Position numbers and translations under genes: made by a program. This document shows, piece after piece, positions 18,688 to 22,806 of a stretch of DNA of 64,000 nt (its first letter is position 1; the number at the start of each line of letters is the position of its first letter). The notes under the pieces were generated by a model. That model was not told the origin of the DNA. It was given only the letters and a program-made list of their open reading frames with translations, and ran no database searches. The stretch comes from Isurus oxyrinchus. Its lineage: Eukaryota. The stretch covers positions 2,418,001 to 2,482,000 of the forward strand of contig JANJGN010000071.1 in the NCBI GenBank assembly GCA_026770705.1, written 5' to 3'.

Positions 18688-18780
18688 ATGGGAAGCTCCC
18701 AGATGAAATGGCGACTTGTCTTGTTCACTCTGACTTTGCTGCTCTCCCTGCAGCTGAGTCACTTCTTCTCCTTGTCGAGG
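18688..18780 (+). CDS. HAMP: Hepcidin-like prepropeptide exon 1 (signal peptide) MGSSQMKWRLVLFTLTLLLSLQLSHFFSLSR
   Basis: ATG about 70 nt downstream of the TATA box; hydrophobic signal; 93 nt; phase-0 donor GTAAGC at 18781. Confidence 0.88.
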
Positions 18781-18979
18781 GTAAGCTAAGAGATGTCCCT
18801 CTGGGTGAGGTGTTTCTTGCACATGACTCTACGTCTACCACCCAGATAGACTGGTCTCTTCCGCAGTTTGATATTATTATGTTCGTGCCTTTAATATTGT
18901 CGCCCTCTATGAATTTAACATCATTTCCTTCTGTCGTTTCCCCTGAAATTCTCATTCTTGTTTTCAATCCCTCCTCAGC

Positions 18980-19650
18980 CACTCCCTATCTCTGTAACCT
19001 CCTCCAGCCCGTACAACCCTCCCTATCTCTGTAACCTCCTCCAGCCACTACAACCCTCCCTATCTCTGTAACCTCCACCAGGCCTTACAACCCTCCCTAT
19101 CTCTGTAACCTCCTCCAGCCCCTACACCCCTCCCTATCTCTGTAACCTCCTCCAGCCCCTACAACCCTCCCTATCTCTGTAACTTCCTCCAGCCCCTACA
19201 ACAATCCCTATCTCTGTAACCTCCTCCAGCCCGTACAACCCTCCCTATCTCTGTAACCTCCTCCAGCCCCTACAACCCTCCCTATCTCTGTAACCTCCTC
19301 CAGCCACTACAACCCTCCCTATCTCTGTAACCTCCACCAGGCCTTACAACCCTCCCTATCTCTGTAACCTCCTCCAGCCCCTACAACCCTCCCTATCTCT
19401 GTAACTTCCTACAGCCCGTACAACCCTCCCTATCTCTGTAACCTCCTCCAGCCCCCAAAACTCCCCCATCTCTGTAACCTCCTACAGCCTCTGCAACCCT
19501 CCCTATCTCTGTAACTTCCTACAGCCCTTACAACCCTCCCTATCTCTGTAACCTCCTACAGCCTCTACAGCCCTCCCTATTTCTGTAACCTCCTCCAGCC
19601 CCTACAACCCTCCCTATCTCTGTAACCTCCTCCAGCCCCCACAACCCTAC
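18980..19650 (-). repeat. About 37-bp minisatellite in HAMP intron 1
   Basis: (ccctccctatctctgtaacctcctccagcccctacaa)n, about 18 units. Confidence 0.9.
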
Positions 19651-19709
19651 CTAAATCACTGGTCTGAGTCTCACTCCAGGGAATTCAGTCCCATAATGTA
19701 GATCAACGC

Positions 19710-20270
19710 TCCGTGCTGAGGGAGTGCTGCACTCTCAGAGGGTCAGTAGTGTGGAAGTGTTGCACTATTGGAGGGACAGTACTGAGGGAGTGCTATACTG
19801 TCGGAGGTCAGTACTGAGGGAGTGCTGCTGTGTCGAAGGGTTAGTACTGAAATAGAGCTGCACTGACGGAGGGACAGTACTGAGGGAGCGCAGCACTATC
19901 GAAGGGTTAATACTAAGGGAGTGCTGCAGTGTCAAAGGGTTAGTACTGAGGGAGCACAACAATGTTGAATGAGACATTAAACCGAGTCCCCCGTCTGCCC
20001 TCTCGGGCGGGTGTGAAAGATCCCACAGCCACTATTTGGAGGAAGAGCAGGGGGAGTTCTCCCCGGTGTCCTGGCACCAATATTTATCCCTCAACCAACA
20101 TCACCAAAAACAGATGATCTAGGCCATGATCACATTGCTATTTGTGGGATCTTGCTGTGCACAAATCAGCTGCCACATTTCCTACAGTGTGAGTGCACTT
20201 CAAAAACATCCTTCAGTGGCTGTGAAATGCTTTGGGATGTGGTGAAAGGCGTTAGAGAAATGCAAGTCTG
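19710..20270 (+). mobile_element. Deu-type SINE with expanded 33-bp minisatellite
   Basis: Tandem gtactgagggagtgctgcactg units run directly into the SINE body. Confidence 0.75.
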
Positions 20271-20368
20271 TCCTCCTCCCCCTCTCTCTCCTGTACCTCT
20301 CTCTCTCTCTCTCCCTCTCCCTCAATCCTCCTCTCACTTTCTCCCTGATAAATTCTTTCTTTTTGCAG

Positions 20369-20425
20369 GTTGACACTGCTTTAGGTTCTTCGACGATTGA
20401 GAAATCTGTGGATTCCCCGGACACG
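20369..20425 (+). CDS. HAMP: Hepcidin-like exon 2 (prodomain) VDTALGSSTIEKSVDSPDT
   Basis: Strong polypyrimidine tract plus cAG (20367-20368); 57 nt; phase 0-0; donor GTAGGT at 20426. Confidence 0.85.
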
Positions 20426-21954
20426 GTAGGTGGAAATTCATTCCTTATTTTAAGGTTTCTCCCTGCTCGTTTCTTCCACAGAAAGTTTTCTGATTTCAAG
20501 CTGATTTCAGTGGCAGTCTGTCTCGGTTATACTCAGGAGGCATGTTTGAAATCGAGCCCCCCTCCCCCCCTTTTTTTGCAAAGCTGGGAAGAGACAATTC
20601 CAAGGAAGTGAACATATCCCCACAGGAATTTTAAATGTAACCCACGCCGGGAATAGTGAGAGGGAGACTGATCCAGCCTGGGAGTGGGTTAAAGAGAGGC
20701 TGGGAGTCGAGAGTCGGAGAGAGGGATGGAATGGGGGAGGGAGGGATTGGAAGAGAGAGACAGAGAGTGGGACGGGGAGGGGTGAAAGGGAAAGAACATA
20801 GGTGGGAGAGAGTGACAGAGGGAGAAATTAAAGAAGAGATGCAGAGTGAGGGAAAGTGAAAAGGGAAGAGAGATTGTCCAAGAGAGAGAAATTAACAGGG
20901 AAGGGAGAGTTACAGAGTGAGCGAAAGGTACAAAAATAGTGTGAGAGAGAGGGAGAGATACAGAGTGGGAGAAGGAGACAGGGGAGAGAGAGGGAGAGAG
21001 ACAGGAAAAGGGAGAGAGGAGTGAAAGATTGGGAGAGAGGGCAATTGAGAGGAAGAGTAGGAGAGAGAGAGACAGGGAGAGGAGGAGTGGATGAGAGGAA
21101 GAGAGAGAGAGATATGGAGCAGGAGAACACCTCCTCCGGTCCCGATGTTCCTCCAAAATCTCTGACATTACTGCATCTCCCGGGTCCCCCTGATTCCCAT
21201 CGCTCCACCATTGGTGGCCGTGCCTTCAGCTGCCTGGGGCCCTGAGCTCCAGAATACCCTCCCTTAACCTCTCTGCCTCTCTCTCTCTCCTTTAAGACGC
21301 TCCTTAAAAACTGACATCTTTGACCAAGCTTTTGGTCACCTAACCCTAATATCTCCATATGTGACTCAGTGTTAGACTTCTCTCTGATTTACGCTCCGGT
21401 AATGTGGGCTGGGACTTTTTGCAATGTCAGAGGCGCTGTGTAAATGCAAGTTGTGAGTGTTATGTGGAAGGGAGACCCCAGGCGGCAGTCAGTGCCAGAG
21501 ACTGGAGTCATTGTGTGCAGACCATATCTAATCTCTCCGAATGCACAATCGGTTTGACTGTCAGCCAAAGCATTTTTGATATTTGATCCTTCTAACTGTT
21601 TATAACCAGGCCTACATCATACACCGAGAGGCTGGTTAATCAACAGACACCTTAGAGGATCGAGTGAAAGACAAAGAGGACTTGCATTTCTCTAGCGCCT
21701 TCCAACACATCAGGACGTCCCAAAGTGTTTCGCAGACAATCAAGTGCTTTTTTTCTTTCATGTGAGGTCACTGATGTACTGTGGGAAAAGAATCAGCCAT
21801 TGGCGCACAGTAAGATCCCACAGACAGCAGCATGATAATGACCAGCGCGCTCCCAGTACTTGCACTGCAAGTGTCAGTTCAGGATGTGTGCTCGATTCTC
21901 TGCAACTCTCAGCTCTGAGTTAAAAGGACCACCAGGCATAATTGAGAAATTACC

Positions 21955-22600
21955 GAGCTGTCGGAGGGTCAGTACCGGCGGGGGGGGCAGGACAGTCGGA
22001 GGGTCAGTACTGAGGGGGTGCTGCATTGTCAGACGGTCAGTCTTGGAGTGCTGCACTGTCAGAGGGTCAGTACCGGCGGGGGACTGCACAGTCGGAGGGT
22101 CAGTACTGAGGGGGTGCTGCATTGTCAAACGGTCAGTACTGAGGGAGTGCTGCACTGTTGGAGGGTCAGTACTGAAGGGGTGCTGCATTGTCAGACGGTC
22201 AGTATTGAGGGGGTGCTGCACTGTTGAAGGCGCTGTCTTTCAGATGAGATGTTAAACTGAGACAACATCTGCCCTCTCAGGTGGATATAGAGGATTCCAT
22301 GGCCACAATTTAAATGAAGTGCGTCAGGAGTTGGGGGTATGTGTGGAGGGGGTGGTGGGGGGTGGATGGGATACAGTTATGTCTGCTTTCCTGGGGCAAA
22401 CATTTATCCCTCAACTGACATTGGTAAAAAACTGAAAATCGGGGCCATTATCACATTTCTGTTTGTGGGATCTTGCTGTGCGTGAATTGCCTGCTGCGTT
22501 TCCTACATTACAGCGGTGAGCTCACTTCAGAAAAAGTCCTTCCTTCAGCTGTGGAACACTTTGGGCCATCCTGAGGAGGGGAAAGGCGCTATAGAAATGC
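21955..22600 (+). mobile_element. 33-bp minisatellite plus Deu-type SINE in HAMP intron 2
   Basis: Same family as 19710-20270. Confidence 0.75.
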
Positions 22601-22689
22601 GCCATCCTCCTTCCAATGACGCGCCTGATTGAAATGATGCCTTCTTTCTTTCCGGAATGTTCTCACCTATTGTCCTCCTGCTTTTCCAG

Positions 22690-22806
22690 GGCTCCTTGCT
22701 GCAGCGCCAGAAGAGAATGGGCAGACAGCAGCGCTGCAGATTCTGCTGTAACTGCTGTAATTGGAGAGAACCAAATGAGACTTGTGGTATCTGCTGTAGA
22801 TTTTAG
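22690..22806 (+). CDS. HAMP: Hepcidin-like exon 3: GSLLQRQKR / MGRQQRCRFCCNCCNWREPNETCGICCRF*
   Basis: ttttccAG acceptor; furin site RQKR; eight cysteines in the hepcidin pattern C-x2-CC-x-CC-xn-C-G-x-CC; stop TAG 22804-22806. Confidence 0.95.
   Translation, partial: GSLLQRQKRMGRQQRCRFCCNCCNWREPNETCGICCRF

What the first reader, a model, noticed from the sequence alone, without database searches (positions are those of the whole stretch)
18688..22806. Hidden intact three-exon hepcidin gene in a probable cartilaginous fish
Seen: exons of 93, 57 and 117 nt, all phase 0 with canonical splice sites, encode an 88-aa signal-pro-mature peptide with an RQKR furin site and eight cysteines. It is not called as such in the ORF track. 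Established: HAMP has this 3-exon, phase-0 structure and cysteine pattern. Such small genes with repeat-filled introns are easily missed, so this may be an unannotated chondrichthyan hepcidin.
Basis: partly seen in the sequence, partly recalled or inferred. Interest (0 to 1): 0.88.

Follow-up and report, generated by a model that had tools for sequence, protein, structure and literature searches.

The report
Diverged hepcidin gene copy in shark
This is a real, intact three-exon gene for a hepcidin-type peptide in a shark genome, but it is a fast-diverged extra copy that has lost the iron hormone's receptor-binding end, and a more canonical relative is already public under an uninformative name.

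Summary
Exons 18688-18780, 20369-20425 and 22690-22806 have GT/AG sites and are all in phase 0. They encode 31+19+38 = 88 residues with RQKR and eight cysteines.

Exon 3 alone passes Pfam Hepcidin (32.1 bits, cut-off 27). Each exon aligns end to end, without gaps, to a RefSeq basking-shark protein, XP_078389754.1 ("uncharacterized protein LOC144671611", 88 aa, Pfam Hepcidin 44.8 bits). This supports the splice model independently.

That relative keeps a canonical N-terminus (MSHLSVCVY) and has the same 8-residue loop, so the long loop belongs to the lineage. The window's copy reads MGRQQRCRF. Signal and pro parts are 88% identical to the relative, the mature peptide only 41%. This is the pattern of a defence-peptide paralogue, like teleost hamp2.

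Siglec/MAG/CD22-like exons flank the gene, the conserved HAMP neighbourhood. Contigs of one run cover only the exons, but the contig over the stop codon differs at 6 of 289 places, so expression of this very copy is unproven. No protein like exon 3 was found in the protein collection.

The scan has already found and followed up several other hepcidin copies on other DNA of this genome.

Verdict: genuine, ordinary family member; moderate interest.

The parts
18405..18412 (+). TTGCATCA, a C/EBP-ATF composite-like motif in the proximal promoter (weak lead only)
   Evidence: motif scan; no statistics, not tested
18469..18478 (+). GGCGCC followed directly by AGAC: a BMP-responsive-element-like site plus Smad-box, about 175 nt upstream of the inferred transcript start
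   Evidence: it is the only GGCGCC in the 64 kb (1.75 expected anywhere by shuffling). That GGCGCC is the BMP-RE of mammalian HAMP promoters is my own knowledge.
18611..18616 (+). TATA-like box (TATAAG)
   Evidence: It lies 28-33 nt before the first base (18644) covered by the exon-1 contig of run X4. Contigs cannot prove a start, so this is an inference.
18644..18687 (+). 5' UTR (at least)
   Evidence: run X4 record 1 lies on 18644-18779 with 0 differences
18688..18780 (+). exon 1 coding part: signal peptide (n-region with K7/R9, hydrophobic core residues 10-21) and start of the pro-region
   Evidence: 29/31 identical to residues 1-31 of XP_078389754.1
18781..20368 (+). intron 1 (GT..AG), holding a 37-bp x18 minisatellite (18982-19653) and a 33-bp array (19716-19954)
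20369..20425 (+). exon 2: pro-region, 19 codons
   Evidence: 16/19 identical to residues 32-50 of XP_078389754.1; depth in X4 and X5 is confined to this bin
20426..22689 (+). intron 2 (GT..AG) with GA-rich and 33/99-bp arrays
22690..22716 (+). exon 3, end of the pro-region, with the RQKR proprotein-convertase site (22705-22716)
   Evidence: the relative has REKR at the same place
22717..22803 (+). mature 29-residue peptide, eight cysteines, 8-residue loop with an N-E-T sequon, net charge about +2.4, pI 8.5. A second minimal RXXR site (RQQR) lies directly before Cys7.
22804..22806 (+). stop codon TAG
22807..23058 (+). 3' UTR (at least), running into an interspersed repeat. The nearest poly(A)-signal-like hexamers are AATACA at 23083 and AATAAA at 23578.
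   Evidence: (X4 record 8, 22770-23058, 6 differences)
25778..25891 (+). possible alternative terminal exon inside a retroelement fragment (acceptor cag|G, 37 codons plus TGA, phase 0). It corresponds to the tail of the annotated isoform X3 of the basking-shark gene.
   Evidence: 33/37 identical to residues 51-87 of XP_078389755.1; use in this copy not shown
13212..13619 (+). context: Siglec-type V-set exon upstream of the gene
   Evidence: best solved relatives sialoadhesin and MAG
38273..38761 (-). context: Siglec-type V-set exon downstream (first of three; the others are at 50685-51125 and 62874-63359)
   Evidence: Pfam V-set and Ig_CD22 above threshold; best solved relative MAG, E 9e-11

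Best explanation
This is a structurally intact gene of the hepcidin family on the + strand of a shark genome. It sits in the ancestral hepcidin neighbourhood, beside Siglec/MAG/CD22-like genes. Its three phase-0 exons encode an 88-residue prepropeptide. By inference, signal peptidase removes about 24 residues. A furin-type convertase then cuts after RQKR and releases a 29-residue cationic peptide. That peptide should fold into the four-disulfide hepcidin hairpin, with a loop of 8 residues instead of the 4-5 seen in human and bass. The gene is not the canonical hormone copy. A RefSeq basking-shark protein has a nearly identical signal and pro-region, and it keeps the hormone-type N-terminus (S-H-L-S-V-C-V-Y) with the same long loop. 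This copy has R, Q and R where that one has H3, L4 and V6. I therefore read it as a recently duplicated, fast-evolving 'type-2' hepcidin, the shark counterpart of teleost hamp2, which most likely acts as a secreted antimicrobial or inflammatory defence peptide and not as the ferroportin ligand. My odds: real hepcidin-family gene about 0.95; diverged paralogue of a canonical copy about 0.8; defence peptide and not hormone about 0.6. Shown here: the gene structure, family membership, relatedness to the annotated shark gene, the neighbourhood, and exon-confined coverage in sequencing contigs. Inferred: the processing sites, the fold, the function, and the promoter elements.
For: Structure. Family: Pfam Hepcidin 32.1 bits against a cut-off of 27 on exon 3 alone. 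The best solved relative is bass hepcidin 1S6W, a hamp2-type peptide by my own knowledge. Splice model: the three exon translations align gap-free and contiguously to residues 1-31, 32-50 and 51-88 of XP_078389754.1, which itself scores 44.8 bits on Pfam Hepcidin. Paralogue pattern: signal plus pro-region 52/59 identical, mature peptide 12/29, non-cysteine mature positions 4/21, Fisher p = 8e-6. Canonical relative: its mature peptide aligns to human hepcidin-25 from residue 2, SHLSVCVYCCGCC against THFPICIFCCGCC, with the same 4-residue loop insertion. Cysteines in this copy are at 7, 10, 11, 13, 14, 23, 26 and 27. The first five sit where human hepcidin-25 has them and the last three are shifted by the 4-residue loop insertion. 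Neighbourhood: Siglec V-set exons lie on both sides, with MAG and sialoadhesin as best solved relatives and Pfam Ig_CD22. Transcription: in run X4 the depth in the exon-1 bin equals one contig of depth 147 lying on 18644-18779 with no differences. That contig carries 30 further letters that do not continue into the intron. Depth is about 109 in the exon-2 bin and 370 in the exon-3 bin, but 0 to about 1 in the repeat-free intron bins. Run X5, from another study, shows the same pattern for exons 1 and 2. Shark origin.
Against: Expression of this particular copy is not shown. The only X4 contig over the stop codon and 3' UTR differs at 6 of 289 places, including the last codon (Phe to Tyr). No contig with this window's letters covers those places. 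The runs are only guessed to be RNA, the tissue is unknown, and the splice joints themselves were not among the rows printed. Three features would fit an iron-regulated ligand: the promoter holds the window's only GGCGCC, and the peptide keeps the 6-residue spacing before Cys7 and an aromatic at position 9. The single-sequence structure model was poor (pLDDT 64, helical), so it gives no support for the hairpin. Signal-peptide cleavage was judged only from a hydropathy scan. The comparison protein may come from another species or from another locus of the same genome, so I could not separate paralogy from orthology with DNA.
Confidence: 0.6

Rival explanations
1. It is a working iron-regulatory hormone gene. 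The 29-residue peptide binds shark ferroportin despite its polar N-terminus, and the gene is driven by BMP/SMAD signalling like mammalian HAMP.
For: The only GGCGCC of the 64-kb window lies about 175 nt upstream of the inferred start and is followed by AGAC. Cys7 and Phe9 are kept, with the same six residues before Cys7 as in hepcidin-25. The gene sits in the conserved HAMP-MAG/CD22 neighbourhood. Cartilaginous-fish ferroportin already has the hepcidin-binding cysteine (PMC8235187).
Against: Positions 3, 4 and 6 are R, Q and R, while the annotated shark relative keeps H, L and V, as do human (H, F, I) and, from my own knowledge, fish hamp1. The mature peptide is the fastest-changing part of the protein, the opposite of what a conserved hormone shows. 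One motif found after looking is weak evidence (chance about 1-2%). No STAT site (TTCNNNGAA) was found within 1 kb upstream.
Confidence: 0.25
2. It is an intact-looking but silent young duplicate, a pseudogene in waiting. The transcripts seen come from sister copies.
For: The only contig over the stop codon and 3' UTR in X4 differs at 6 of 289 places, and no contig carries this window's letters there. Earlier notes of the scan report sister copies with a broken first donor site, so decay occurs in this family.
Against: The frame is open, all four splice sites are canonical, and the TATA-like box and GGCGCC are present. The exon-1 plus 5' UTR contig matches this copy at 136 of 136 places at depth 147. 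Contigs drop rare variants, so absence proves little.
Confidence: 0.12
3. It is a chance arrangement of short open frames, not a gene.
For: None beyond the shortness of the exons.
Against: Pfam score above threshold; exon-by-exon collinearity with an annotated 88-aa protein; exon-confined coverage.
Confidence: 0.01

Closest known systems
XP_078389754.1, 'uncharacterized protein LOC144671611 isoform X2' of the basking shark Cetorhinus maximus (RefSeq; P0011)
   Same: 88 residues with the same three blocks (1-31, 32-50, 51-88). Signal and pro-region are 88% identical. A dibasic convertase site sits at the same place (REKR against RQKR). The mature peptide is 29 residues with cysteines at the same eight positions and the same 8-residue loop. 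Pfam Hepcidin is above threshold. A retroelement-derived alternative last exon (isoform X3) is also present downstream of the window's gene.
   Different: The mature peptide is only 41% identical (4 of 21 non-cysteine positions). The relative has the hormone-type N-terminus M-S-H-L-S-V-C-V-Y and a lysine-rich loop (NKKGTKKT). The window's copy has M-G-R-Q-Q-R-C-R-F and the loop NWREPNET, which carries an N-glycosylation sequon.
Teleost hamp2-type hepcidin (hybrid bass hepcidin, PDB 1S6W)
   Same: It is the best solved-structure match. The core is identical (CRFCCNCC ... CG.CCRF). There is no H-[LF]-x-[ILV] motif before Cys7. From my own knowledge, hamp2 genes are multi-copy, fast-evolving, antimicrobial and not iron-regulatory. 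The divergence pattern here fits that.
   Different: The loop is three residues longer (8 against 5 between the CC pair and the next Cys). The near-identity of the prepro part to a canonical-type shark protein argues for an independent, shark-lineage origin, so it works like hamp2 but is not its orthologue. The N-terminal extension is longer and more cationic. No antimicrobial test exists.
Human hepcidin-25 (PDB 1M4F, 2KEF, 6WBV)
   Same: The gene has three exons, with a signal peptide, a pro-region and a convertase site. There are six residues before the first Cys. The first five cysteines are at the same positions and position 9 is aromatic. The gene is a neighbour of MAG/CD22-type genes; the human order USF2-HAMP-MAG-CD22 is my own knowledge, and PMC4453067 places HAMP with USF2 and the FFAR genes.
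   Different: The N-terminal contact residues H3, F4 and I6 are replaced by R, Q and R. There is no X-X-H metal-binding N-terminus. The loop is four residues longer. Human hepcidin was not returned at all (E up to 10) when exon 3 was searched against solved structures, whereas it is the best match of the canonical-type shark protein.

Membership tests
Hepcidin family (Pfam PF06446) | Score at or above Pfam's gathering threshold | tested here: met
32.1 bits against 27 on exon 3 alone, profile positions 24-53 of 53.
Hepcidin family (Pfam PF06446) | Eight cysteines in the order C-x2-CC-x-CC-loop-C-x2-CC | tested here: met
   Positions 7, 10, 11, 13, 14, 23, 26 and 27 of the mature peptide. The loop is 8 residues instead of 4 (human) or 5 (bass).
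Hepcidin family (Pfam PF06446) | Prepropeptide: N-terminal signal peptide, pro-region, RX(K/R)R convertase site just before the mature peptide | tested here: met
   There are basic residues at 7 and 9 and a hydrophobic core at 10-21 (9-residue hydropathy up to 2.7). RQKR is at residues 56-59. No signal-peptide predictor was available, so the cleavage site is inferred.
Hepcidin family (Pfam PF06446) | Three-exon gene with the mature peptide in exon 3 | tested here: met
   the exon blocks match an annotated shark protein end to end.
Hepcidin family (Pfam PF06446) | Four-disulfide beta-hairpin fold | tested here: inconclusive
   The AlphaFold2 single-sequence model was poor (pLDDT 64, helical) and was not used for a fold search.
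Hepcidin family (Pfam PF06446) | Conserved neighbourhood beside MAG/CD22-type Siglec genes | tested here: met
   There are V-set exons on both sides, with MAG and sialoadhesin as best solved relatives and Pfam Ig_CD22 above threshold. USF2 was not seen in the window.
Iron-regulatory hepcidin (mammalian HAMP / fish hamp1 type) | N-terminal ferroportin-contact motif x-[ST]-H-[LF]-[SP]-[ILV]-C-[ILVR]-[FWY] | tested here: not met
   The sequence is M-G-R-Q-Q-R-C-R-F, so only Cys7 and Phe9 are kept. The annotated shark relative meets the motif.
Iron-regulatory hepcidin (mammalian HAMP / fish hamp1 type) | Induction by iron through BMP/SMAD elements and by inflammation through STAT3 | tested here: inconclusive
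   GGCGCC plus AGAC is present at 18469-18478 and is unique in the window. No TTCNNNGAA lies within 1 kb upstream.
Iron-regulatory hepcidin (mammalian HAMP / fish hamp1 type) | Binds ferroportin and causes its occlusion or internalisation | not testable with these tools
Antimicrobial 'type-2' hepcidin (works like teleost hamp2) | Conserved prepro part with a hypervariable, cationic mature peptide, in a multi-copy family | tested here: met
   Identity is 88% in the prepro part against 41% in the mature peptide, p = 8e-6. Net charge is about +2.4 and pI 8.5. A variant transcript contig has another last residue. That the family is multi-copy rests mainly on earlier scan notes, which I checked only partly.
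Antimicrobial 'type-2' hepcidin (works like teleost hamp2) | Orthology to teleost hamp2 | tested here: not met
   The prepro part is nearly identical to a canonical-type shark hepcidin, which argues for a duplication within the shark lineage. The resemblance to hamp2 is in how it works, not by descent.
Antimicrobial 'type-2' hepcidin (works like teleost hamp2) | Direct antimicrobial activity | not testable with these tools
   This needs the synthetic folded peptide and MIC assays.

The most novel reading that the evidence does not exclude
Sharks evolved their own multi-copy, fast-changing 'type-2' hepcidin lineage from a canonical SHLS-type hepcidin, independently of teleosts. It was co-amplified with the neighbouring Siglec receptor genes. 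Both shark types carry a lineage-specific 8-residue hairpin loop, and in this copy the loop has an N-glycosylation sequon. That would make the hormone/defence split of hepcidin a repeated evolutionary outcome, and it would mean that most copies of the family are missing from current annotation.
Probability: 0.4. Interest if true: 0.55.

Novelty: new member of a known kind. Interest (0 to 1): 0.33.

Why it matters
Hepcidin and its receptor ferroportin form the central iron-control switch of jawed vertebrates, and cartilaginous fish are the earliest-branching living group that has it. No dedicated description of a chondrichthyan hepcidin turned up in the open-access library that I searched. The only mention was a plasma proteomics hit in nurse shark. 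This locus shows two things:
- A shark carries a hormone-type hepcidin, already in RefSeq but unnamed, and also diverged copies that look like defence peptides. This parallels the hamp1/hamp2 split of teleosts.
- Small three-exon peptide genes of this kind are easily missed or left unnamed by annotation.

The practical gains are a correct name for LOC144671611-like genes, a candidate set of natural cysteine-rich peptides for antimicrobial testing, and a test case for how ferroportin-binding residues are lost after duplication. The single gene by itself is an ordinary family member.

Tried and rejected
- **Representative-library search, exon 3:** no hits. A 38-residue query cannot reach significance against 1.8 billion proteins, so this is uninformative.
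- **Word-indexed search, exon 3:** the query was the 57-codon open frame 22633-22803, scoring residues 18-57. No candidate was found. Alone it is weak, but it gains weight because the same trick on exon 1 did find the relative.
- **ESM Atlas:** a hepcidin cluster came second at 0.75, below the level that counts. It is a lead only.
- **AlphaFold2 on exon 3 without an alignment:** pLDDT 64 and helical. I judged it meaningless for a disulfide-rich peptide, so no fold search was run.
- **Rfam on the whole window:** nothing.
- **Supplement of the nurse-shark plasma paper:** no hepcidin entry held as text.
- **Paper searches:** hepcidin with cartilaginous fish, shark, elephant shark, chondrichthy-, bamboo shark and synteny. 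No description of a shark hepcidin gene was found.
- **The look-up of encoding contigs:** I could not read the DNA around the basking-shark gene or around the shark Siglec genes, so there is no dN/dS and no direct synteny comparison.
- **Read laying:** one call was allowed. Its printed joint and loose-end rows were taken up by intron repeats, so the two splice joints are inferred from where contigs lie and from bin depths, not read directly.
- **STAT-type site TTCNNNGAA:** none within 1 kb upstream.
- **Left out by the operators' rule:** the joined 88-residue model was never built, searched or folded, and all searches were exon by exon by reference. The four N runs (3468-3665, 5214-5732, 9440-9608, 59805-59965) were left as they are.
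- **Rejected readings:** a chance ORF, and the animal's single or canonical hepcidin.

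
Full report
**Observation.**
- An ATG at 18688, in a good context and with no upstream ATG in the covered leader, opens a 93-nt exon that ends at 18780 before GTAAGC.
- A 57-nt exon, 20369-20425, follows a strong pyrimidine tract and CAG, and ends before GTAGGT.
- A 117-nt exon, 22690-22806, follows another strong acceptor and ends in TAG.
- The translations have 31, 19 and 38 residues, so all junctions are in phase 0 and the product has 88 residues.
- Exon 3 holds RQKR followed by 29 residues with cysteines at 7, 10, 11, 13, 14, 23, 26 and 27.
- The cysteine pattern occurs once in the six-frame translation of the window, and none of the exons has a second copy in the window.

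Every search was done exon by exon, by reference.

**Family.** Exon 3 alone scores 32.1 bits on Pfam Hepcidin (gathering score 27, E 1.4e-7). Its only solved-structure match is the bass hepcidin 1S6W. They share CRFCCNCC and CG.CCRF, and the alignment needs a net three extra residues (a four-residue gap offset by one insertion) in the loop.

**An annotated relative and the splice model.** A word-indexed search with the open frame around exon 3 found nothing. The same search with the open frame around exon 1 (18616-18786) found two RefSeq proteins of the basking shark Cetorhinus maximus:
- XP_078389754.1, 88 aa, 'uncharacterized protein LOC144671611 isoform X2'.
- XP_078389755.1, 87 aa, isoform X3.

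The first scores 44.8 bits on Pfam Hepcidin. My three exon translations align to it without gaps and exactly end to end:

| Window exon | Residues of XP_078389754.1 | Identical |
|---|---|---|
| Exon 1 | 1-31 | 29/31 |
| Exon 2 | 32-50 | 16/19 |
| Exon 3 | 51-88 | 19/38 |

**What kind of hepcidin.** The basking-shark protein has REKR followed by a 29-residue peptide that begins M-S-H-L-S-V-C-V-Y. It aligns to human hepcidin-25 from residue 2, SHLSVCVYCCGCC against THFPICIFCCGCC, and it needs the same four-residue loop insertion.
- The long loop is therefore a feature of this shark lineage's hepcidins in general, not an oddity of this copy.
- What is special here is the N-terminus. H3, L4 and V6 are replaced by R, Q and R, while Cys7 and an aromatic at position 9 are kept.
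- The signal and pro parts are 52/59 identical between the two proteins. The mature peptide is 12/29 identical, and only 4/21 outside the cysteines (Fisher p = 8e-6).
- A conserved prepro part with a hypervariable, cationic mature part (net charge about +2.4, pI 8.5) is the signature of host-defence peptide families and of teleost hamp2. A conserved hormone shows the opposite.

I therefore read this as a lineage-specific 'type-2' paralogue that works like hamp2 but is not its orthologue.

**Neighbourhood and host.**
- Siglec-type V-set exons lie upstream (13212-13619, + strand) and downstream (38273-38761, 50685-51125 and 62874-63359, - strand).
- Their Pfam V-set and Ig_CD22 scores are above threshold, and myelin-associated glycoprotein and sialoadhesin are their best solved relatives.
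- In mammals HAMP lies beside MAG and CD22. That order is my own knowledge. PMC4453067 places HAMP with USF2 and the FFAR genes. So the gene sits in the ancestral neighbourhood.
- The best relatives of one V-set exon are all shark proteins: Carcharodon 68%, Scyliorhinus 61%, Rhincodon 58%, Mobula 46%.
- Together with the basking-shark hit, this confirms a cartilaginous fish, most likely a lamniform shark. I cannot tell whether the window is from Cetorhinus itself.

**Transcription.** No run is on record as RNA. Four small-share runs were laid on the stretch.
- In run X4 one contig of depth 147 lies on 18644-18779 with no differences. It carries 30 further letters that do not continue into the intron.
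- The depth of the exon-1 bin (120.3) is exactly that contig, and nothing covers 18780-18807.
- The exon-2 bin has depth 109 and the exon-3 bin 370. The repeat-free intron bins have 0 to about 1.
- Run X5, from another study, shows the same for exons 1 and 2.

This is the pattern of spliced RNA, but the joints themselves were not among the rows printed, because intron repeats crowded them out. The only contig over the stop codon and 3' UTR (22770-23058) differs from the window at six places, including Phe to Tyr in the last codon. No contig with the window's letters covers those places. So transcripts of this type exist, but expression of this very copy is not shown. The variant contig is what a sister copy or another allele would give.

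**Promoter leads (inferred).**
- A TATAAG box lies at 18611-18616, 28-33 nt before the first covered base.
- The window's only GGCGCC, the core of the BMP-responsive elements of mammalian HAMP by my own knowledge, lies at 18469-18474 and is followed by AGAC. About 1.75 sites are expected anywhere in 64 kb, so the chance of one in the proximal 500 nt is about 1-2%. This keeps the hormone reading alive.
- No STAT-type site was found.

**Earlier notes of the scan.** Look-ups show that this genome has many hepcidin loci inside a Siglec cluster.
- Some are on the same piece, 1.6-2.2 Mb away, and some are on other pieces.
- Several have the same 29-residue type.
- Some have a broken first donor site or a mutated GGCGCC.
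- Follow-up agents called them copies of a family.

I used these notes as leads. Here I tested that this copy has intact donors and an intact GGCGCC, that a canonical-type relative is public, and that divergence is concentrated in the mature peptide.

**Known or new.** Hepcidin in sharks is not new as such. It was detected in nurse-shark plasma, and the same paper noted its absence from the whale-shark annotation (PMC9207270). RefSeq also holds a basking-shark gene, though unnamed. I found no paper describing a chondrichthyan hepcidin gene, its long loop or a type-2 lineage. No protein resembling this exon 3 was found in the protein collection. I class it as a new member of a known kind.

**Limits.**
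- The single-sequence structure model was unusable.
- The representative-library search was blank for a 38-residue query.
- The joined protein was not searched.

Noticed in passing
window 25778-25891 (+): A fragment of a retroelement reverse-transcriptase ORF, 3 kb downstream of the hepcidin stop, has an AG acceptor and an open phase-0 frame of 37 codons. It is 33/37 identical to the tail of the annotated basking-shark isoform X3 (hepcidin exons 1-2 spliced to this tail). The duplicated unit therefore includes this exonised element, and the same alternative product may be made here.
   Followed up: partly
window 13212-14085 (+): A lone Siglec-type V-set exon lies on the + strand upstream of hepcidin. 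It overlaps at its 3' end, and is followed by, a retrotransposon gag-like ORF (13570-14085). No further Ig exons were seen on that strand, so it may be a truncated Siglec gene.
   Followed up: no
window 28677-29391 vs 46270-46984; 37445-38144 vs 62046-62745; 38273-38761 vs 62874-63359: These ORF pairs are similar, the first two nearly identical; the V-set pair is more diverged. They show that the downstream Siglec genes and their embedded retroelements are recent segmental duplicates, with spacings of about 17.6 kb and 24.6 kb.
   Followed up: no
window 19716-19954, 21958-22224 (also 8230-8808, 44850-46115, 60351-60947): A 33-bp minisatellite (consensus near CTGAGGGAGTGCTGCACTGTCGGAGGGTCAGTA) recurs in both hepcidin introns and across the window. 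It gives long spurious ORFs, and its depth in the laid contig runs reaches 10^6, so it is a very abundant repeat of these genomes.
   Followed up: no
window 18982-19653: A 37-bp unit is repeated 18 times at 90% identity inside intron 1.
   Followed up: no
window 1-3100: This is an extremely strand-skewed, low-complexity stretch (GC skew 0.98 over the first 2 kb) that gives proline- and serine-rich pseudo-ORFs on both strands.
   Followed up: no
window 22802 and 22914-23008: The transcript-like contig of run X4 carries A for T at 22802 (last residue Phe to Tyr) and four or five further changes in the 3' UTR, while its exon-1 contig is identical to the window. This fits a sister copy or an allele whose 5' half is the same.
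   Followed up: partly
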